A model generated the notes under the pieces. That model was not told the origin of the DNA and did not search any database. It was given only the letters and a program-made list of their open reading frames with translations. The position numbers and the translations under genes are program-made. From the NCBI GenBank assembly GCA_951804945.1, contig OX638154.1, forward strand, positions 47,244,001-47,308,000: a DNA stretch of 64,000 bases. Reading direction: 5' to 3'. This DNA comes from Podarcis cretensis. Taxonomy: Eukaryota. Within the stretch, counting starts at the first letter, position 1; every line of letters begins with the position of its first letter. Of this stretch, positions 7,170-59,683 are shown piece by piece.

Positions 7170-7986
7170 TTGAATCCTGACAAGACAGAAGTACTGTTTC
7201 TGGGGGACAGGAGGCGGGCAGGTGTGGAGGACTCCCTGGTCCTGAATGGGGTAACTGTGCCCCTGAAGGACCAGGTGCGCAGCCTGGGAGTCATTTTGGA
7301 CTCACAGCTGTCCATGGAGGCACAGTTTAAATCCGTGTCCAGGGCAGCTGTGTACCAGCTCCATCTGGTACGCAGGCTGAGACCCTATCTGCCTGTGGAC
7401 TGCCTCGCCAGAGTGGTGCATGCTCTGGTTATCTCCCGCTTGGATTACTGCAATGCACTCTACGTGGGGCTACCTTTGAAGGTGACCCGGAAACTACAAC
7501 TAATCCAGAACGCAGCAGCCAGACTGGTGACTGGGAGCGGCCACCGAGACCATATAACACCGGTCTTGAAAGACCTACATTGGCTCCCAGTACGTTTCCG
7601 AGCACAATTCAAAGTGTTGGTGCTGACCTTTAAAGCCCTAAACGGCCTCGGTCCAGTATACCTGAAGGAGCGTCTCCACCCCCATCGTTCTACCCGGACA
7701 CTGAGGTCCAGCACCAAGGGCCTTCTGGCGGTTCCCTCACTGCGAGAAGCCAAGTTACAGGGAACCAGGCAGAGGGCCTTTTCGGTAGTGGCGCCCTCCT
7801 TGTGGAATGCCCTCCCACCAGATATCAAAGAGAACAACAACTACCAGACTTTTAGAAGACATCTGAAGGCAGCCCTGTTCAGGGATGCTTTTAATGTTTG
7901 ATGTATCATAGTATTTTAATATTCTTTTGGAAGCCGCCCAGAGTGGCTGGGGAGGCCCAGCCAGATGGGCGGGGTATAAATAATAA

Positions 7987-8026
<40 letters not shown>
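7170..8026 (+). mobile_element. Young 5'-truncated L2 LINE; uninterrupted ORF2 C-terminal frame (ORF 7155-7901) plus 3' UTR and (TTA)n tail
   Basis: LNPDKTEVL...RSLGVILDSQLSM...ISRLDYCNALYVGLP...LQLIQNAAARLV...HITPVLKDLHWLPV...RAFSVVAPSLWNALP are L2 ORF2 hallmarks; (TTA)n tail at about 7988-8026. Confidence 0.95.
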
Positions 8027-19872: not shown

Positions 19873-20215
19873 TGTCAGGTTCCCAGGTTCCCAGCTTGGT
19901 AACACAGTAAGCGTAGATAATTAAAAAGGAGAATTTATTGCAGAAACAAACAGATAGCTCCAGACAGCTCTAACAAAGTCTCTGGCACCATTACTCAAGA
20001 TGACCCTTCTGAAGACTTCTTCCAGCACCTCCAGCAGATATTGAACTTATGACCTTTACATCATTTGTTTTGCTTCCTATCAGCAACCCTTCCATTCATC
20101 GACTCCTCGGACTGATTGGATCAGCTCCAACCTCTTCCGGTTCTGAGAGGCTGTCTCTGAGTTTCTTTCTGCAGTTGGCTGTAAACCTTTGCTTGGAGCT
20201 GGCTCATTCCTGACA
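19873..20215 (-). mobile_element. Solo LTR (343 bp), probably Ty3/Gypsy
   Basis: TGTCAGG...CCTGACA terminal inverted repeats; perfect 5-bp TSD CTGTA (19868-19872 / 20216-20220); AATAAA on the minus strand near 19935. Confidence 0.85.
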
Positions 20216-26167: not shown

Positions 26168-26992
26168 TGTCAGGGGCTCAGGAGCAGAGGCACAGGGGAG
26201 AGAGGAAATGGAGAGCGAAGGGGAAGAATCTGAGGGCAGCGTAGGGGAGTATGAGAGTGGCCCGAGAGATTCCATAAGCTTCTCCAGCGAATCAGAAGAT
26301 TCCCAGAGGGGGGCGCCGACGGCCAGGGCAAGGGGAGTCCCAGGGGGGACACACCAGAAGCAAGGGGCCAGCGGGGACTCCCAAAGCAGCAGCGAGAGAT
26401 CAGGACCAGCTCCTCCACCAGAGCGTAGTGGAGGGGAAGAATCTCATGTATCAGGACCAGCTTCTCCTCCAGCAGGGAGAGAAGATGAATCAGGGCTGGC
26501 CACGCCTCCATCGCAGAGTGAGGGAACGGAGGGGAAGTCAGGTCCAGCTAGCCTCTCTGAAGGGGGAAGCAGTGACAGGAGCAGTGTAACGGTTAGGAGG
26601 AAGGTTGCCGGCTGGGCGCGCGTGCCAAGTTAAAATGTACAGGCGCGGGGCACAGCAGGTAACCCGGATGGGGAACCAGGTCCTAAAGCCCGCCGGAGGG
26701 AGGGGGAAGACTCAGGGGACTCAGCGTCAGAAGAGTCTAGAAAGGGTAAGACCCCAGCAGACAGGCGGACCCAGAGGAGGAAAGAGCAAAGGAAGAGGTG
26801 GAGCAAGGCTAGAGTCTTAAACTGGTGTCTGGGGGGTGGAGATTCAGACGGAGCTTCAGCGGTCTAGGGTTTAAGACGTAGGGCTGCACGCCGCGGCTTT
26901 GAAATCGAAACTGCGTTTCAATAAACACTTTTGTATATAACAACGGACTGGCGTTGGTCCTTTGTGAGCTGGGACCTCGGGCAGCCCTGACA
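26168..26992 (+). mobile_element. Solo LTR (825 bp) carrying a long acidic/Ser-rich reading frame
   Basis: TGTCAGGG...CCCTGACA termini; near-perfect 5-bp TSD GTAAG/GTATG; AATAAA near 26920; CpG-rich, suggesting it is young. Confidence 0.88.
26169..26867 (+). pseudogene. LTR-internal reading frame (ATG at 26208; one in-frame TAA at 26631-26633; ends TAG 26865-26867), product unknown
   Basis: VRGSGAEAQGREE-MESEGEESEGS...RVPS*NVQARG...GKTPADRRTQRRKEQRKRWSKARVLNWCLGGGDSDGASAV*, translated by hand past the single stop. Confidence 0.5.
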
Positions 26993-28392
26993 GTATGTGT
27001 TCTGGTTTTCAAACTTTTTTCAAAAGTCGAACATGCTCCGTTTTGGGTGTCACACTTCCGATATGAGAGCCACACTTCTGTTTTGAGTGTTACACCAAGG
27101 TCTGTCTGTTTTTGCTATTTATTTTGCGTTTTTGTTTTGGCGGCTCTTTTTTGTTTTGTGACTGTGTGGAACCCAGTTCAGCTACTGATTGACTGATTGT
27201 GTGACTGCAGTACATTGTTTCATTTTATGGATCAATGGTCTTGTTAGACAGTAAAATTCATGTTAAATTGCTGTTTTGGGGTTTGTTTTTAAAAGTCTGG
27301 AACGGATTAATCCATTTTGCGTTACTTTCTATGAGAAAGCGCGCCTTGATTTTGGAACAGACTTCCGGAATAGATTAAGTTTGAGAATCAAGGTGCTGCT
27401 GTACTGGATTGGCTTTGCTGGTACATTTGCACCATGCCAGTCTTGCCACCTTCTCACCCTCCTGGCGAGTAGCTGCAACTCATATGTCAGGAGGTCAGTT
27501 AAATGCCTCTGTCCCACCATACTATCAGCTGCCGATTGTAAAGGCACTTGAAAAAGAAAACTACCTACACACCTAGGGCAAAAGACACACATAAAACTGA
27601 AAGAACCAGCATTACTTAAATCCTGCAGCACCCTATCATGTTAAATAGGTAGCAAGAGCAATACCCTTCCTGGGACAGAATAAAACTCAACAATCCAGGG
27701 AGGCTCATTTGGCTGTTCTGCTGTATTTGTTTTAGGCAACCTTCATGGCAAAGGCAGCAGCAGCAAATATCAGAATCGTTGAATCCCATTATTACAGATC
27801 ATATCACAATGCAAATGAGCCACTATAGGGGAGCCTAGATTTCTTCTCTATTTGTTTTACACAAAGAAAGGCAAAAAATGTAAAAGATATCTAAGACTCA
27901 ATTATTTTTAAGATGGGGTACTTTGATATATTGTTTTAATTTTGTCACCGTGTGTGTGTGTGTGTGGAAGTGGAGAATAAAGAATATAGAGACAAATCTG
28001 GCTATGAAAGACAGGCCCAGTGTGCTTCTTAGCTTTAAATCAGACTTCCTCAACCCACAAAGTCCCTGTGTGATATTAGGCAAGTTGTAGATTTTGACCA
28101 AATAGAACCAATGGACTAGAACTCCGTGACTCAAATCCCCGTGAAGGCCTCAGTTCAAGGGAGCCATAAATATAAAAATATGGGTTAACTCTGATCCTGC
28201 TTTCGGTTCTCTTTGAAACTGCAAGAGTTTCGGGCCAGACATACTGATTTGTTTCCAAAGATGTCCTGTAGATGTCAATTATGCAGTAACATTGCACAAG
28301 CATCGCAGAACAATTACAGTGGAATAATGTGTGGACTGTCCAATATAAATTCACCACTAATGTTCTATTATTTAATTAATGTCATGTTGCAG

Positions 28393-41633: not shown

Positions 41634-42030
41634 TGTGGCTAGTTTCAGAACTCACAGGGTTAAGGAGTTCTGAGTGACGTCTCTCCATTCCTGAGGCGTG
41701 ACTAGGAGGAGGGAGTGGCTTTTTCTCACTGCCTGTTTTGTTCCGGCTTCTGAAGGGAAAAGAAGCAGGATGAGCGCTCTGAGCCCAGGAAATCTGTCTT
41801 TTATTGTTTAACTGCTTGAATAAAGACTGAAACTATATACACACTGATGCCTAAGTGTGATTGATCTGCTAAACACCGCAGAGCAACAGCAAGCTGCGTT
41901 AGTACTCTGCAATTGTGGCTGACGTTGGACGGAGGATCGAAGCAGCAGAGGCGCGAAGAGGAAGTGTGCCGGGCTGCAGTTCAATTAGCTAATTGGGGTC
42001 CAATCCAATTAGCTACGCCACGTTTTCACA
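41634..42030 (+). repeat. 5' LTR (397 bp)
   Basis: tgtggctag...ttttcaca; AATAAA at 41819-41824; differs from the 3' LTR at 2 positions by my manual comparison. Confidence 0.97.
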
Positions 42031-42041
42031 GGTTATGGGTC
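42031..42041 (+). promoter_or_regulatory. Primer-binding site, half-tRNAiMet (hemivirus) type
   Basis: GGTTATGGGTC directly after the LTR is complementary to the tRNAiMet anticodon arm (…GGCCCAUAACC), as in Drosophila copia (GGTTATGGGCCCAG). Confidence 0.8.
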
Positions 42042-42245
42042 GCTGAAAAATGCTTTGAAGCTGTTGCGACGTTGTGCCGGTGTGTGTTTGAAGTCAGCTG
42101 GAAAGACGCTGCAGCAGAGCTGAGGTCCTGCATCTGAAGCAGAACAGCTTGCTGGAAGGAGCTGCACAGGCGCTGGAAGCAGCTGAAAGCCGGGTGCCGG
42201 AAAGCTGACTGGTTACGTGAGTACAGCTGGGGCCCCGGGGAGAAG

Positions 42246-43571
42246 ATGGCGGACAGCCATAAATCATGGGCGGTACCGTTCGAAAAGCTCACTATCCAAT
42301 CTTGGGCAACCTGGTCCAGAAAAGTGAGGGGTTGGTTTTTGGCTACAGGGCTGTGGAATGCAAGCCAGAGGGAGCCAGTACCCCCCACTCCAGGTGCTGC
42401 TGGGACAGACGCTGCAGGCTTTCAGGCTGCGTTGCCAGAAGATAGCCAGCAGGGAATGCAAAGGGAGTTTTGCATGTTGAAAACATGCGTACACGCATCG
42501 CTGTTGCCGCATTTGGAGGGCGTGGAGTCAGCAAGGGCTGCCTGGGAGGTGCTGAGAAGTTTGTGTGAAACTTCAGCAGGAGGCCAGAGCCCTGAAGAAG
42601 TCATGAAAAGCCCAGAGATGGCTGAAGCCCTTGTCCCTGATGGGAAGATCGGGGGGGGGGCTGAGAATTCCAAAGGCAAATTTGAAAAGTTTTCCACTGT
42701 GAGTGCTGAAGTGGAACGCCGTTCCAGAGAGGGCAGGGCTGGCACAGAGAGCTCTTCCGGAAGAAGGGGGGCCAGGCCGGCTGAAAGGAGCCCTGGGCAG
42801 TGTTTTTCCACTGTTTCTCGTCGTTGTTTTGTTTGCAATTCAACTGAACATCTGCGTCGCTTCTGCCCACAGAGGGGCAGGGAGGCTGGGCAGGATGTTT
42901 TGAAGGTCGCTTCCCATGGGAATCAGCCTGGTTTCCATGGTAGCCAGTCGTCCAGGAAGACAGCCAGGCGTGGGAAGCCGCAAGGAGAACGTGCCTTAGA
43001 CAATGATGATGCTTATCAGCTGACGGCCTCTCTTGCCAAGTTTGCAGATAGCTCCAGGAGAGACAATGACATGTGCTTTATAATTGACTCTGGAGCGAAC
43101 AGGCATCTGATAACAGAGACATCTACTGTCGAGATGTGGAATTGCAGATCTGTTCCAGCTGGAATAACTGTGGAATTTGCTGATGGAACAAAAAAATCTC
43201 TGTCTAACATAGCAAATGTTTATTTTTCTGTTTTGCAAGCGCAGTTGGAAGTTTACGTGGTACCTGGGATGAAACATTGTCTTTTATCTGTTCCTTGTCT
43301 GTTACAGGAAGGGTATAAGGTGTGCTTTGAAAACAATGTTTGTACAATCTCCAGGGGAGGAAAGCAACTAGTCAGTGTTGCAAAGGGGCAGAATAATCTC
43401 TTTGTGAGGGGAATGCTGAGAGGGCTCAAGCTATGCGTGCTACAGTTCCCACTCATGTTTCATGTGCCTGTGCATGGCACAAAAAGATGGCACATGGCAC
43501 TCTTGAAGAAATCCAGATGTTGCCGGAGTGCGCTAAGGGTTGCAAAATACAGGAGTGTGGCAGATCCCTAA
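42246..43571 (+). pseudogene. gag: Copia gag-protease (frameshifted near 43410-43435)
   Basis: N-terminal W..W motif, LLPHLEGVESARAAWEVLRSL (Copia gag), CCHC knuckle CFVCNSTEHLRRFC, protease FIIDSGANRHL, YVVPGMKHCLLSV. Confidence 0.9.
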
Positions 43572-44852
43572 ATTGTAGGGCATGCAAAAGGGCAAAGGTA
43601 AAAGGGTGCAGTTATCCCAGGGTGGAGCGGGTAACCACAAAACCCTTTGAGCTTGTGCACACAGACCTTTTTGGACCCAGTGCTGACACTGACAGATGAC
43701 CATATGCAGAACTCCTGGGCCTATGCATTGAAATGCAAGGAGGATGCAGCGCAACTAATTAAAAATTGGGTTGCGGAGGTGGAACTAAGGTTCTCCACCA
43801 AGGTGCAGGGAGTCAAGAGTGACCGATGTGCACAGTTTACTGGGTCTGCTCTGCAGAAGTTCTTTCACCAGAAAGGGATACATCACAAGGTGACTTCTCC
43901 TCAGGAGAAGGGGGTGGCAGAGCTCAGAAGTCAAGCTCTGGTTAAAGCTACAGAGGTTTTGCTGTCAGACTCTGGTTTACCTCCAAGCTTCTGGGGGGAG
44001 GGAATTCAGACAGTGAATTTCACTATGAACCGGTCCTACAATTCAGTAGTAGGTGACACCCCGTTCTTTATGCTTCACGGAAAGAAACTGCTGATTCATT
44101 TCTTCCATGTGTTCGGGTCACAGGCCTTGGTGCCGATACCAAAAGCACTGCAAAAGCAAGGTGGCCCTAAGTTCCAGAAAATGATCTTCTGTGGATATGA
44201 ACCTGCGACAAAGGGATGGAGGTTCGCATATCCAGAAGGTGATCAGACCAAGCTTCTGGTCAGTAAACATGCTGAATTCTGTGAGCAGGATAGTTGGTCA
44301 AAGACTCCTGCAAGGCATGACGTTCTCTCAGAATGTCTGTCTGATTCTGAGGGGGAAGGAGAGGCAGAGGATGAACCTGTTGCTGACGACCAAGTTTCTG
44401 AACAAGGTCAAGAACAGGGTTGGGCATCTCCACAGGTTGTTAAAAGAGAGCCCAAGAGTGAGCCTTCGTCTCCTGTTAGCAAAGTACAAAAGGCCCGAAG
44501 ATGCGTTAAGTCAGAGGGGGAGGATACTGATGGAGGAGACACACCTGCTGACTACAGTGAGTCAGAGGAAGTACCTCAGTTTGTGCCCAGACGGTCCACT
44601 TGCACCACGAAGGGAATTCCACCTGAGAGGTTTCAGGTCACTAATGCGTGGGTTGGTTTCGCACAGTGCGAACCTGGGAGTTGTGAGGAGGTTCAACAGT
44701 TGCCTGACAAGGACGCCAGGAAGGGGCACAAGGCACTGGAAAAGGGACTGATCTCACAGAGGTCTGTAAAGGTAAATACCCAGGTCACCTCAGGACTGGA
44801 TAGAAGAGGGGGTGTGGCTAGTTTCAGAACTCACAGGGTTAAGGAGTTCTGA
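43433..44852 (+). pseudogene. pol: Copia integrase (zinc finger, DDE core, SH3-like domain, linker), frameshifted near 43680, reading on into the 3' LTR
   Basis: WHKKMAH...CRACKRAK, PFELVHTDLFGP, KSDRCAQF, KGVAELR, SGLPPSFWGEG, MIFCGYEPATKGWRF, PRRSTCTTKGIPPERF, then only the EP...-type start of the RT region before the PPT. Confidence 0.9.
44802..44812 (+). promoter_or_regulatory. Polypurine tract
   Basis: AGAAGAGGGGG abutting the 3' LTR. Confidence 0.9.
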
Positions 44853-45209
44853 GTGACGTCTCTCCATTCCTGAGGCGTGACTAGGAGGAGGGAGTGGCTT
44901 TTTCTCACTGCCTGTTTTGTTCCGGCTTCTGAAGGGAAAAGAAGCAGGATGAGCACTCTGAGCCCAGGAAATCTGTCTTTTATTGTTTAACTGCTTGAAT
45001 AAAGACTGAAACTATATACACACTGATGCCTAAGTGTGATTGATCTGCTAAACACCGCAGAGCAACAGCAAGCTGCGTTAGTACTCTGCAATTGTGGCTG
45101 ACGTTGGACGGAGGATCGAAGCAGCAGAGGCGCGAAGAGGAAGTGTGCCGGGCTGCAGTTCAATTAGCTAATTGGGGTCCAATCCAATTAGCTACGCCAC
45201 ATTTTCACA
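44813..45209 (+). repeat. 3' LTR (397 bp)
   Basis: Direct repeat of 41634-42030. Confidence 0.97.
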
Positions 45210-46692: not shown

Positions 46693-46734
<42 letters not shown>

Positions 46735-47765
46735 TTATTATTTGTACCCCGCCCATCTGGCTGGGTTTCCCCAGCCACTCTGGGCGGCTTCCAGCAAAGA
46801 TGAAAAATACACTAAAATGCAACATATTAAAAACTTCCCTGAACAGGGCTGCCTTCAGATGTCTTCTGAATGTCAGGTAGTTGTTTATCGCTTTGACATC
46901 TGATGGGAGGGCGTTCCACAGGGTGGGCGCCACTACCGAGAAGGCCCTCTGCCTGGTTCCCTGTAACTTGGCCTCTCACAGTGAGGGAACCGCCAGAAGG
47001 CCCTCGGAGCTGGACCTCAGTGTCCGGGCAGAACGATGGGAAAGGAGACACTCCTTCAGATATACTGGACTGAGGCTGTTTAGGGCTTTAAAGGTCAGCA
47101 CCAACAATTTGAATTGTGCTCGGAAACGTACTGGGAGTCAATGTAGGTCTTTCAAGACCGGTGTTATATGGTCTCGGCGGCCGCTCCCAGTCACCAGTCT
47201 AGCTGCCGCATTCTGGATTAGTTGTAGTTTCCGAGTCACCTTCAAAGGTAGCCCCACGTAGAGCGCATTGCAGTAGTCCAAGCAGGAGATAACCAGAGCA
47301 TGCACCACTCTGGCGAGACAGTCTGCAGGCAGATAGGGTCTCAGCCTACATACCAGATGGAGCTGGTGAACAGCTGCCCTGGATACAGATTTGACCTGTG
47401 CCTCCACGGACAGCTGTGAGTCCAAAATGACTCCCAGGCTGCGCACCTGGTCCTTCAGGGGCACAGTCACCCCATTCAGGACCAGGGAATCCTCCACACC
47501 TGCCCGCCTCCTGTCCCCCAAAAACAGTACTTCTGTCTTGTCAGGATTCAACCTCAATCTGTTAGTTGCTGTCCATCCTCCAACTGCCTCCAGACACTCA
47601 CACAGGACCTACACAGGTAGCAAACTTTGCCCCAGGATGTGAGCGGAAGTCGCGCAGCGGCAGTGGGAGGCCCCATTAGTGAAAGCGTGCCTCAGGTTAA
47701 GAACGGTTTTGGGTTAAGAACGGACCTCCGGGACGAATTAAGTTCATAAACAGAGGTACCACTGT
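46619..47765. mobile_element. Tc1/mariner-type MITE split by an L2 insertion
   Basis: ta|cagtggaaccttgggtt ... aaacagaggtaccactg|ta termini; internal sequence resumes at about 47612. Confidence 0.8.
46695..47610 (-). mobile_element. Young 5'-truncated L2 LINE with (TTA)n tail
   Basis: ORFs 47138-47557 and 46679-46933 are nearly the same protein as 7155-7901, with a TGG>TGA stop at LH*LP. Confidence 0.95.
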
Positions 47766-50219: not shown

Positions 50220-50647
50220 TGTTAGGGACTGTGCAGAAAAGGAATGGTGGAGACTGCCTCCCCAGCCCGACCCTTCCAGAGAAGAAGACAGTTCAGAATT
50301 ATCATAGGAGAGGAGGAGGAAGAAGCACCAGAGGGGCAACAGAGGATGGACACAGTGTCTTTAGAAAGCATTCCAGACCCCCCACTCTCAGAACCCGGCA
50401 AGCATTGAAAGTAGGAGAGCAAAGAGCTCAAAGGCAGAGGGCACTTCTCAGCACCTGTAGTGATGATGCACGAAGGGAGAGAGGGAGGGGGTGGAGACCC
50501 ACTCGAAGCAACGCCCTTATTCCAAGAGGTGACATTTCCAAGCCTCTCTCTGTGAATATTGAATAAAAAGCTGTTGGTAAGAACTTTTCCTTGTCTTATC
50601 CATTCCTGGCTACCTGCCTTGGGGGTTGGAGCCACTGCCGCCTGACA
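50220..50647 (+). mobile_element. Solo LTR (428 bp), older, with a decayed internal reading frame
   Basis: TGTTAGG...CCTGACA termini; AATAAA near 50562; flanks TGACT/TGATA match only partly. Confidence 0.75.
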
Positions 50648-57665: not shown

Positions 57666-58278
57666 CCGACAACACCTTTATGGCCATCATTTTCTTTCTT
57701 TTGTAAAATTCACAGGAAAATTGGCAGTATGACTGCTGACGCAACAAACAACGTGCAAGAGAGTATTTGTGATCCTATCCATGCATACAAGCATGTATGG
57801 CTGGGATAAATCATCCATTTCAAATAATATTAATTAATTAATTAATTTCAATTAATTTCATTAGAATTGTATACTGCTCTTCATCTATAGATCCCAGGGT
57901 GGTTGACAACTTAAAAATACAAGATTAAAAAAACACATAATAAAAACAAAACAAAACAAAACAAAAACTTCCCTCCCCCCCATCTCCTCCCACAACCTCA
58001 TTTAAAAGGGTATAGGATGTTAATCAGACAAAGGTGTATAATGAAGGCGCCAGCTGAACCTCCCCAAGGAGAGCATTCCACAAAAAGAAATCAAGCAGCA
58101 AAGTCATATTCTAAAGTCGACCAAATGGAGGGAGCACCGCAGATACTTCTTGATGGGTGTTATTTGATCTAGGGCCACCTATGGAAAGTGGGTGGGAAGA
58201 CTTTCCAGTGCAGTGAGCAGCTTGTCTTGTATTCCCATATAAAGCTACCAGGTTCACGAACATGCTTAGGTCTATAGC

Positions 58279-58912
58279 TGTGCTGGTCCTGAGGGTTAAC
58301 CGTGCGGCGAGGTCTGAGTCCAGTCCGAGGTTGAGGGTGTGGTATGGAGGCTGTCCGTCAAAGCTAAAGCTGGGTCCAAGGCAGGGAGTCGGGAGAGGTC
58401 AGGAACTCTGGCAGAAGAGCAGGACAGGGTGCAGGCAACAATGTTGGTTAGGTTGGACAGGTTGAACAGGTTACCAACAATGTTGCTCCTGCAACCTGGG
58501 ACTGGGGCTGGCTGGCTTTTATCTGCCCCGAGGCATAGGGCGGCCCTGGTCCACAGGTGACTCGCCTTTCCTGGCCTGGAGGCGAGCACTCCTCCTGATG
58601 GAACTTAGTTCCCTCCGCCTCTCTGCCCTGAGCCTCTGCAGCTCAGGAGAGACTGGTGGGTTACCGGACCTAGAGGCAACCTCAGCTTCCCCTGACAGGG
58701 CTGAGAGTGGAGCACCTGCAGGCAATGGGTCCTCCATCACCTCAGGAGCCAGAGCAGACTCAGCTGGTGCCTGCACCTGAGGGTCCAGCACAGGTGAGGA
58801 CACTTCAGGCTCAAGCCCCAGCCCCAGCTCAGCTGGTTCTGGAGGCGGGGACTCCTCTGCAGGCTGGGATTCCTCAGGTTCAGCCTCCGAGTCTGAATCC
58901 CAGGCCATCACA
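58279..58912 (-). mobile_element. Solo LTR (634 bp) carrying an intact 130-codon ORF
   Basis: TGTGATGG...CCAGCACA termini on the minus strand; perfect 5-bp TSD ATAGC (58274-58278 / 58913-58917). Confidence 0.9.
58519..58911 (-). CDS. LTR-encoded acidic/Pro-rich peptide with a basic RRSARL motif (putative Pol/integrase C-terminal tail; expression unknown)
   Basis: (V)MAWDSDSEAEPEESQPAEESPPPEP...PVSPELQRLRAERRRELSSIRRSARLQARKG; the frame starts at LTR nucleotide 2. Confidence 0.45.
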   Translation of the reverse strand: MMAWDSDSEAEPEESQPAEESPPPEPAELGLGLEPEVSSPVLDPQVQAPAESALAPEVMEDPLPAGAPLSALSGEAEVASRSGNPPVSPELQRLRAERRRELSSIRRSARLQARKGESPVDQGRPMPRGR

Positions 58913-59683
58913 ATAGCCCTTTGCAGGCATTACATCTGGGGGTGAAGTAAACGCACATCCCTGTCAACTGCCATGGAAAAAATGGAACATCCTGTTTTTT
59001 CTCACAAGAGGACAGCGGCCAAAATGGCCATCACAATTTTGGGCTGCACTTTTTCAGGCATGGTGCCCGCAAACACACATTATGGGCCACTGTGCAAGAT
59101 CACTACTCTGGTCTTTGCATAGGTACAGACTCGTGCAGGAGTGTGCAGCTGGAAGATGGTGTCCTGGTTTTGGTTTGCTTCATATCTGAAGGATATGGAC
59201 ACATGAGGAGGGCAGTGGTGATGAGTGCAGTAGTGCCATTCTCCCTCTTCCCCTGCTACCTCATGGGGAGTGATTTTGCAGTGGGAAGACCTCTGTACTT
59301 GTAAAAACTCTTCATGATTTTTAGAGCCCTGGAAAACCAGAGTTGGGCCATGATTTGACTCAAGGGTTTCCTTTGTCTAAGAGCGACACTCAGCCTTCCC
59401 CAACCCGGTCCCCTCTAGTTGCTTTGGATAACAACTCCCATCAGCCCCAGCCAGCAGCCATGCTGGAAGTTGTAGTCCAAAACATCTGGCTTTATTAGAT
59501 GGCATCTGACTTTCTGAGAAACTGCTTGGGGGGGGGGGAATCATCTTGTACTTAGAAATTTTATTGCCCTTATGTAGATTTTGGATTTCTTTTGTGGGCC
59601 AACATGACTACTTTAGCTCTTTTTTTGTGACTTGGAGCATACAAAATGTTTATGAAGGCCTTCCTCCCTTGATCTTCATCACA

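What the first reader, a model, noticed from the sequence alone, without database searches (positions are those of the whole stretch)
58279..58912. Solo LTRs encode a shared-architecture peptide in a fixed phase; this copy carries an HMGN-like RRSARL motif
Seen: this TSD-flanked (ATAGC) solo LTR has an uninterrupted 130-codon frame starting at its 2nd base (T|GTG ATG GCC TGG). The frame is acidic/Pro-rich and then reads SPELQRLRAERRRELSSIRRSARLQA. Three other solo LTRs here with no obvious nucleotide similarity (26168, 50220, 19873) also open at base 2 (T|GTC, T|GTT, T|GTC). Two of these show the same acidic-then-Arg-rich layout. The full Copia element shows where that phase can come from: its pol frame crosses the PPT into U3 as GGT|GTG. 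Established: RRSARLSA is the core of the HMGN nucleosome-binding domain, an arginine anchor for the H2A/H2B acidic patch. In plant CRM chromoviruses the integrase putative targeting domain is encoded in sequence extending into the 3' LTR. Inference: several lizard LTR-retrotransposon families may encode a chromatin-tethering Pol/integrase tail inside U3. Solo LTRs with their own ATG would then be dispersed mini-genes for a nucleosome-binding peptide. I do not know of a description of this in squamates.
Basis: partly seen in the sequence, partly recalled or inferred. Interest (0 to 1): 0.8.

Follow-up and report, generated by a model that had tools for sequence, protein, structure and literature searches.

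The report
Retrotransposon Pol tail encoded in LTR
This dead solo LTR of a very abundant wall-lizard (Podarcis) Gypsy-type chromovirus carries the last 130 codons of the element's polymerase/integrase protein inside the repeat itself, ending in a conserved HMGN-like RRSARL motif that may help dock the integrase on nucleosomes, though binding is untested.

Summary
Window 58279-58912 (minus strand) is a TG..CA solo LTR with a perfect 5-bp duplication (ATAGC). Its frame is open for 130 codons from base 2: acidic and Pro-rich, then SPELQRLRAERRRELSSIRRSARLQA.

The "fixed phase in four LTRs" claim holds for two. The 26168 LTR is open for 154 codons. The 50220 and 19873 LTRs stop after 28 and 16. 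The Copia frame enters its LTR for only 12 codons, in an element without RT.

Frame length alone is not significant: 35% of shuffles reach 130 codons. Relatives decide the matter. Two separate Podarcis muralis gene models read from an integrase-type chromodomain, through a purine-rich stretch, straight into V-MAW(D/E)SDSE, which is LTR base 2. Other models attach the same peptide to a Ty3/Gypsy gag-PR-RT. A subfamily only about 51% identical keeps the frame through in-frame indels, and it keeps the basic RRSARL block best (77-88% against 51-65%).

So U3 encodes a C-terminal tail of chromoviral Pol, as in plant CRM elements. There is no family-level similarity to HMGN, only the motif, so nucleosome tethering is an inference. 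The "solo-LTR mini-gene" idea is not supported.

The parts
58274..58278 (.). Target-site duplication, left copy (ATAGC)
   Evidence: ATAGC directly flanks both ends of the repeat.
58279..58912 (-). Solo LTR (634 bp, TGTGATGG...CCAGCACA) of a very high-copy Podarcis chromovirus family
   Evidence: In one search, summed contig depth jumps from about 40-60 to 10^5-10^6 exactly at 58276-58279 and 58912. The flanks of other copies are unrelated to each other (loose-end agreement 0.33-0.5).
58913..58917 (.). Target-site duplication, right copy (ATAGC)
58519..58911 (-). 130-codon frame from LTR base 2 plus TAA stop; the U3-encoded C-terminal tail of Pol in the parent element
   Evidence: Searches show the frame. 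Searches show that P0002 and P0010 join it in frame to a chromodomain; three-base periodicity chi2 is 31.5 here, against 5.2 for the rest of the LTR; the 99th percentile of control windows is 24.7.
58648..58911 (-). Acidic, Pro/Ser-rich part of the tail (codons 1-88); variable, with in-frame indels between subfamilies
   Evidence: 20 D/E against 1 K/R; 51-65% identity to relatives, with gaps of 4, 6, 6 and 10 residues; the tail has pLDDT below 50 and no secondary structure in the AF2 model of P0002.
58570..58647 (-). Conserved basic block PELQRLRAERRRELSSIRRSARLQAR (codons 89-114)
   Evidence: 77-88% identical to P0003 and P0001, against 51-65% for the acidic part.
58579..58596 (-). RRSARL motif, HMGN-like (7 of 8 residues of RRSARLSA)
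   Evidence: position; present in P0001 and P0003. RRSAR are the HMGN2 residues resolved on the nucleosome acidic patch.
58516..58523 (-). TATA-like box GATAAAAG that contains the stop codon of the frame
   Evidence: read directly from the sequence. Promoter function is inferred.
58279..58515 (-). Rest of the LTR (presumed R-U5 side): no coding signal, more variable among copies
   Evidence: chi2 5.2; depth is 3-5 times lower at 85% likeness, with many joints and small indels at 58334-58510.

Best explanation
Window 58279-58912 is a decayed solo LTR of a very abundant Ty3/Gypsy chromovirus of Podarcis wall lizards. In the parent element the Pol reading frame does not stop after the integrase chromodomain. 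It runs through the polypurine tract and enters the 3' LTR at its second base. It continues for about 130 codons, through nearly all of U3, and ends at a TAA inside the TATA-like box. Every LTR copy, solo copies included, therefore carries this frame.

The tail has two parts: a variable, acidic, Pro-rich, probably disordered linker, and a conserved basic block with an HMGN-type RRSARL motif.

Shown: the LTR anatomy; the frame; its in-frame junction to a chromodomain in two gene models; its retention with in-frame indels in a diverged subfamily; and the family's high copy number.

Inferred: the basic block tethers integrase to the H2A/H2B acidic patch, working beside the chromodomain, which has the three aromatic cage residues Y, W, Y. 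I put this step at roughly 35-40%.

This particular copy is a relic, not a gene.
For: -: phmmer over 1.84 billion proteins gives 7 hits. All are Podarcis gene models.
- P0002 and P0010 (90% identical, separate entries) carry Pfam Chromo (E 5e-15), followed by KPGPDPRLRGGPGRGDGV|MAW(E/D)SDSE. The V is GTG, which is LTR bases 2-4.
- P0004, P0009, P0007 and P0001 carry the same peptide next to Retrotrans_gag, CCHC, RVP_2 and RVT_1. This ties the LTR to a Gypsy element.
- P0003 is 51% identical in the acidic part and 77% in the basic block, and all gaps are in frame.
- three-base periodicity appears only in the ORF part of the LTR.
- none of the 13 listed family-majority letters makes a stop in this frame.
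- P0012, another chromovirus, stops just after its chromodomain, so the tail is an added feature of this family.
- CRM group A coding regions extend into the 3' LTR, which is the precedent.
- RRSAR is the part of HMGN2 that contacts the acidic patch (R23, R26).
Against: - The pol-LTR junction rests on predicted gene models, and such models can hide frameshifts.
- Protein databases hold only copies whose frames are open, so the in-frame indels and the retained frame are biased evidence.
- Frame length is not beyond chance for this GC-rich sequence. Other frames of the LTR are open for 80-104 codons.
- The conserved block lies 30-120 bp upstream of the TATA-like box, so its conservation could reflect promoter DNA rather than peptide.
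- There is no statistical similarity to HMGN.
- The RNA reads are strand-biased, but the library type is unknown. By the usual convention they would be antisense to the frame over U3.
Confidence: 0.75

Rival explanations
1. The tail is translated but has no function of its own. Pol simply lacks an earlier stop, and the conserved basic block reflects constraint on promoter-proximal U3 DNA rather than on the peptide.
For: The block lies just upstream of the TATA-like box. There is no similarity to HMGN beyond six to seven residues. RRSARL is short.
Against: If the tail were junk, a stop anywhere in the roughly 100 upstream codons would cost nothing. Yet subfamilies about 51% identical keep the whole frame open through several in-frame indels, up to the distal block. 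The ORF part shows coding-type periodicity.
Confidence: 0.2
2. The open frame is a by-product of GC-rich, stop-poor composition, and the gene models that contain it are annotation artefacts.
For: 35% of dinucleotide shuffles reach 130 open codons, and other frames are open for 80-104 codons. The models P0005 and P0006 plainly put LTR sequence into unrelated host genes.
Against: Two separate models join the chromodomain to LTR base 2 with the same 20-residue junction. The frame is kept in a diverged subfamily. Periodicity is confined to the ORF part.
Confidence: 0.07
3. The frame is a separate small gene that starts at the ATG at LTR bases 5-7. It would be expressed from a subgenomic RNA or from solo LTRs, as the first reader's 'mini-genes' for a nucleosome-binding peptide.
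For: MAW is kept in all relatives. NCBI and Ensembl models (P0003/P0008, P0006, P0004) start at this ATG.
Against: The ATG is part of the LTR terminus TGTGATGG, which is 7/8 matched to the other end. The frame lies upstream of the LTR's TATA-like box, so the LTR's own promoter cannot transcribe it. This copy has 11 amino-acid changes in 13 listed differences from the family majority, with no sign of constraint. The ORF and non-ORF parts show similar listed divergence.
Confidence: 0.04

Closest known systems
Plant CRM (centromeric) chromoviruses, group A (Neumann et al. 2011, PMC3059260)
   Same: A Ty3/Gypsy chromovirus lineage in which the polyprotein coding region runs past the PPT into the 3' LTR. 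The LTR-encoded part is the integrase C-terminal putative targeting domain.
   Different: In CRM group A the LTR-encoded CR motif takes the place of the chromodomain. Here a type-I-looking chromodomain is kept and the LTR adds about 130 further residues with a different, HMGN-like motif. The host is a lizard, and the copies seen in public runs have unrelated flanks.
HMGN nucleosome-binding domain and the HMGN-like motifs of tardigrade Dsup and yeast Dot5
   Same: RRSARL matches RRSARLSA at 7 of 8 residues when the following QA is counted. It contains RRSAR, the residues resolved on the H2A/H2B acidic patch, in a disordered basic segment (the Dot5 preprint is listed).
   Different: Pfam HMG14_17 and PDB searches find nothing. 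The Lys/Pro-rich stretch that follows the motif in HMGN is absent. The motif sits at the end of a retrotransposon polyprotein. Binding is untested.
Chromatin tethers of retroelements: chromovirus chromodomains and the prototype foamy virus Gag chromatin-binding sequence
   Same: A short peptide or domain of the element's own protein docks the integration machinery on nucleosomes. PFV Gag uses an arginine anchor on the acidic patch (papers listed: PMC9040877, PMC6282019).
   Different: The PFV tether is in Gag, not Pol. No LTR retrotransposon integrase with an acidic-patch motif turned up in the literature searches. That is an absence in the held library, not proof.
Retroviral genes that overlap U3 (HIV nef, MMTV sag; from general knowledge)
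   Same: U3 serves both as coding sequence and as promoter region.
   Different: Those are separate accessory genes with their own start codons and spliced mRNAs. Here the frame is continuous with Pol.

Membership tests
LTR retrotransposon solo LTR | TG...CA termini with short inverted ends, flanked by a 4-6 bp target-site duplication, with no internal sequence attached | tested here: met
   TGTGATGG...CCAGCACA, ATAGC on both sides, single-copy flanks.
LTR retrotransposon solo LTR | Dispersed multi-copy unit with the same edges | tested here: met
   depth rises by 3-4 orders of magnitude exactly at 58279 and 58912. About 100 contigs per run continue into unrelated flanks.
Chromovirus (Ty3/Gypsy with integrase chromodomain) | Gypsy-type gag, protease and RT linked to this LTR | tested here: met
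   P0004 and P0009 carry the LTR peptide plus Retrotrans_gag, zf-CCHC, RVP_2 and RVT_1. They are spliced gene models, so the linkage is by locus, not by one continuous frame.
Chromovirus (Ty3/Gypsy with integrase chromodomain) | Chromodomain at the C-terminal end of Pol, next to the 3' LTR | tested here: met
   P0002 and P0010 have Pfam Chromo (E 5e-15) about 20 residues before the LTR-encoded MAWDSDSE. The integrase core itself was not seen on the same model.
Chromovirus with coding region extending into the 3' LTR (CRM group A type) | Pol frame continuous across the PPT into the LTR | tested here: met
   Shown at protein level only (P0002, P0010). The phase agrees with LTR base 2 of the window copy. 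Parent DNA could not be fetched.
Chromovirus with coding region extending into the 3' LTR (CRM group A type) | CR motif in the LTR-encoded part | not tested
   No CR-motif model was available. The tail shows no Pfam hit, and the element keeps a chromodomain, unlike CRM group A.
HMGN protein family | Significant match to the HMG14/17 family profile | tested here: not met
   no Pfam family at E up to 10 for the window peptide or P0003; no PDB chain at E up to 10.
HMGN-like nucleosome-binding motif (as in Dsup) | RRS[A/S]RL core with the two anchoring arginines and the serine | tested here: met
   RRSARL is in the window copy, P0001 and P0003. One search names RRSAR (R23, S24, R26) as the contacts.
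HMGN-like nucleosome-binding motif (as in Dsup) | Binding to the H2A/H2B acidic patch | not testable with these tools
   This needs a binding assay. PMC12487698 reports that AlphaFold 3 does not place even HMGN2 correctly.

The most novel reading that the evidence does not exclude
A vertebrate chromovirus has added to its integrase chromodomain a second nucleosome tether, encoded by U3. This is an HMGN-mimicking RRSARL arginine anchor for the H2A/H2B acidic patch, so the integrase would grip both a histone tail mark and the nucleosome face. If so, the family's many LTR copies would also spread a ready-made ATG-led exon for a nucleosome-binding peptide, which gene models already splice onto host genes (P0003, P0006).
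Probability: 0.3. Interest if true: 0.75.

Novelty: new variant of a known kind. Interest (0 to 1): 0.55.

Why it matters
If the tail works as proposed, it would be the first LTR-retrotransposon integrase found to use the acidic-patch arginine-anchor route. That route is known from HMGN, Dsup, LANA and foamy-virus Gag. Here it would act together with a chromodomain, which gives a simple, testable model for how a very successful lizard retroelement picks its insertion sites.

It also shows that the 'coding LTR' arrangement of plant centromeric elements exists in vertebrates.

There is a practical point too. LTRs of this family are being annotated as protein-coding exons of Podarcis genes: a V2R-type receptor, a CEP63/Deup1-like gene and several 'uncharacterized proteins'. 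Long open frames in solo LTRs of this genome should be read as Pol relics, not as new genes.

Tried and rejected
- Word-index protein search with the 130-aa peptide found nothing at E 0.01. The full HMMER scan was needed.
No parent DNA, PPT sequence or nucleotide-level dN/dS could be obtained.
- A metagenome DNA scan for the start of the LTR gave 0 matches.
- tblastn of all relatives against the window found no second copy of this family here, so no within-window comparison was possible.
- Pfam at E 10 and PDB at E 10 found no HMGN or any other family for the tail.
- AF2 without an alignment on P0002 gave a low-confidence model (pLDDT 51). It is usable only to say the tail has no predicted structure.
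- RNA strand: one search shows a strong first-mate-on-minus bias over 58464-58912 and balanced reads over 58276-58416. The library chemistry is not on record, so sense versus antisense stays unresolved. I rejected it as evidence either way.
- I rejected the Copia element as a model for the phase. It lacks RT and RNase H, and its frame stops 12 codons into U3.
- I rejected capture of a host HMGN gene. No host protein other than LTR-derived models matched.
Family-majority letters were only classified one at a time against this copy's codons.

Full report
**What is there**

On the minus strand, window 58279-58912 is a 634-bp unit that begins TGTGATGG and ends CCAGCACA. ATAGC sits on both sides. 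From its second base a frame is open for 130 codons, from 58911 to the TAA at 58521-58519.

- The first 90 residues are acidic and Pro/Ser-rich: 20 D/E, 1 K/R, 17 P.
- The last 40 are basic: 13 K/R.
- The basic part reads SPELQRLRAERRRELSSIRRSARLQARKGESP....
- The stop codon lies inside a TATA-like GATAAAAG (58523-58516). The frame therefore fills what would be U3 and ends at the core promoter (promoter function is inferred).

**Is it more than chance?**

Not by length alone.

- The LTR is 61% G+C. An open run of at least 130 codons in some frame occurs in 35% of dinucleotide-preserving shuffles. Other frames of the same LTR are open for 80-104 codons.
- Anchored at base 2, the run is rarer (1.5%), but that frame was chosen after the fact.
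- RRSARL is expected 0.02 times per 64-kb window, so a single hit is ordinary on a genome scale.
- The ORF part does show coding-type three-base periodicity: chi2 31.5, with G at 43% of first positions and 18% of second. The rest of the LTR shows none (chi2 5.2). The 99th percentile of 390-nt control windows is 24.7.

| LTR | Open from base 2 | Note |
|---|---|---|
| 26168-26993 | 154 codons | Past one TAA, a further 82 codons in the same frame |
| 50220-50647 | 28 codons | Long frames are in base-3 phase and on the reverse strand |
| 19873-20215 | 16 codons | No long frame |

The Copia element has LTRs at 41634-42030 and 44813-45209, with 2 mismatches and TSD ACTAC. It does cross the PPT as GGT|GTG, but it stops 12 codons into U3. 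It has integrase core, the SH3-like domain and only the first residues of RT, so it is a deletion derivative. Its crossing phase says little.

'Fixed phase' therefore holds for two of the four solo LTRs.

**The family**

Public runs from several coded species hold about half of the sampled words. Contigs and reads were laid on 57900-59300:

- Summed depth jumps from about 40-60 in the flanks to 10^5-10^6 exactly at 58279 and 58912.
- About 100 contigs per run continue beyond 58912 into unrelated sequence (agreement 0.33-0.5).
- This marks a very high-copy dispersed unit with these edges.
- The part 58464-58912 is 3-5 times deeper than 58279-58463. The latter holds most of the joints and small indels, so it is the more variable part.

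This copy differs from the family majority at 22 or more listed sites. Of the 13 inside the frame, 11 change the amino acid, 2 are silent and none makes a stop. The copy is decaying without constraint.

**Relatives decide it**

The word search found nothing. A full HMMER scan of 1.84 billion representatives found 7 proteins. All are Podarcis muralis or P. lilfordi gene models, which also identifies the kind of genome.

- P0002 and P0010, found with P0002 as query, are separate 'Chromo domain-containing protein' entries, 90% identical.
- Both read ...[35 protein letters not shown]...KPGPDPRLRGGPGRGDGV|MAW(E/D)SDSE....
- The first part is a Pfam chromodomain (E 5e-15), with Y, W, Y at the aromatic-cage positions.
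- RGGPGRGDG is what a purine-rich tract encodes.
- V-M-A-W is GTG ATG GCC TGG, which is LTR bases 2-13.

So Pol of the parent element runs in frame across the PPT into the LTR.

P0004, P0009, P0007 and P0001 attach the same peptide to Retrotrans_gag, CCHC, RVP_2 and RVT_1. P0004 and P0009 share one 90% cluster and differ only where the LTR part joins gag. I take them as isoforms of one locus, so that join is a predicted splice from a 5' LTR, not a natural fusion.

A different chromovirus, P0012, stops right after its chromodomain. The tail is therefore an addition in this family.

**Is the tail constrained?**

P0003/P0008 (NCBI LOC114604991) come from a subfamily only 51% identical over the acidic part. 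They still begin MAWD and still read SPKLQRLRSERRRDLSTCRRSARLQAKQGG.

- The basic block is 77-88% identical to relatives, against 51-65% for the acidic part.
- All gaps between subfamilies (4, 6, 6, 6 and 10 residues) are in frame.
- A functionless read-through would be expected to pick up stops in the 100 codons before the block.

Two cautions apply. Protein databases contain only open copies. And the block lies 30-120 bp upstream of the TATA-like box, where DNA-level constraint is also likely.

**HMGN likeness**

RRSARLQA matches the HMGN core RRSARLSA at 7 of 8 residues. It contains RRSAR, the residues of HMGN2 resolved on the H2A/H2B acidic patch (R23 and the anchor R26). The tardigrade Dsup uses RRSSRL in the same way (PMC12487698).

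Beyond the motif there is no similarity: no Pfam family and no PDB chain at E up to 10. The tail has no confident predicted structure, as expected of such motifs. It may work like an HMGN motif, but it is not an HMGN family member.

**RNA**

One stranded RNA run shows reads over the whole LTR. First mates lie about 10:1 on the minus strand over 58464-58912 and are balanced over 58276-58416. The library chemistry is not on record. By the usual convention the U3 signal would be antisense; by the other convention it would be the 3' end of element transcripts. I draw no conclusion from it beyond this: RNA reads 85-99% like this copy, so from other copies of the family, occur in that related species.

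**Mechanism proposed**

Gag-Pol of the full element is translated from genomic RNA, whose 3' end includes U3. Integrase therefore ends in chromodomain, acidic linker and RRSARL block.

- Shown: the frame, the junction, and the conservation pattern.
- Inferred: the chromodomain reads a methylated H3 tail while the arginines dock on the acidic patch, holding the integration complex on nucleosomes.

Solo LTRs inherit the frame passively. Their own promoter lies downstream of it, and the 'start codon' is part of the conserved LTR end (TGTGATGG, against TGTGCTGG at the other end).

**Known or new**

Coding regions that extend into the 3' LTR and encode the integrase targeting motif are described for plant CRM group A elements (PMC3059260). 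Acidic-patch tethering is known for foamy-virus Gag. Searches for lizard or vertebrate chromovirus tails, for Podarcis LTR elements, and for acidic-patch motifs in LTR-retrotransposon integrases found nothing specific. That is an absence in the held library only. I class this as a new variant of a known kind.

**Second family**

For the 26168 LTR:

- Logan-derived ORFs P0015 and P0016 read on where the window copy has its single TAA, giving well over 200 codons inside the LTR.
- P. lilfordi models P0014 and P0017 read ...GGASRGMD|VRGSGAE. An internal frame therefore enters that LTR at base 2 as well.
- No domain identifies what that frame belongs to.

**Earlier notes of the scan**

About 20 first-stage notes on other pieces of this genome describe open frames in solo LTRs. 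Some mention Arg-rich ends or RRSxR. They are unchecked and I give them no weight as evidence, but the scan has met this before.

Noticed in passing
window 26168-26993 (+): An 826-bp solo LTR (TGTCAGGG...CCCTGACA, flanks GTAAG/GTATG). Its base-2 frame is open for 154 codons, hits one TAA at 26631-26633, then runs 82 more codons to a TAG just before a TTTAAG and AATAAA region. Relatives P0015 and P0016 are open through that point. P0014 and P0017 show an upstream frame (...GGASRGMD) entering the LTR in the same phase. No known domain was found.
   Followed up: partly
window 41634-45209 (+): A young Copia-type element: 397-bp LTRs with 2 mismatches, TSD ACTAC. It has a gag-like ORF and an integrase ORF but no RT or RNase H. 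After PRRSTCTTKGIPPERF and a few RT-start residues, the frame jumps to the PPT and ends 12 codons into U3.
   Followed up: partly
window 57994-58087: A short very high-copy repeat fragment just left of the LTR, with summed depth up to about 136,000. RNA reads on it are strand-biased, mostly first mate on plus. Its identity was not determined.
   Followed up: no
Podarcis gene models P0005, P0006, P0003/P0008: Pieces of this LTR's frame are annotated as coding exons of host genes. They form the N-terminus of a family-3 GPCR model (P. lilfordi), an internal stretch of a CEP63/Deup1-like model, and the start of 'uncharacterized protein LOC114604991'. These are likely annotation carry-over from the repeat, or possibly real exonisation.
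   Followed up: no
window 7170-8026 and 46695-47551; also 1491-1790: An 857-nt pair of inverted copies, 92% alike and 38.7 kb apart, with a third copy 85% alike near 1491. This is another dispersed repeat family with ORFs of 126-248 codons. It was not examined.
   Followed up: no
window 50220-50647 (+): A 428-bp LTR-like unit (TGTTAGGG...GCCTGACA) with an imperfect TSD. Its base-2 frame reads VRDCAEKEWW...SREEDSSELS, then a stop, then ERRRKKHQRGNRG. This could be a decayed version of the acidic-then-basic layout, but the long open frames are in other phases.
   Followed up: partly
protein P0011 (source not named): Another chromodomain protein runs on past the domain as ...SRRGGNV|MIHYSS. This looks like a second chromovirus whose Pol frame crosses a purine tract into an LTR.
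   Followed up: no
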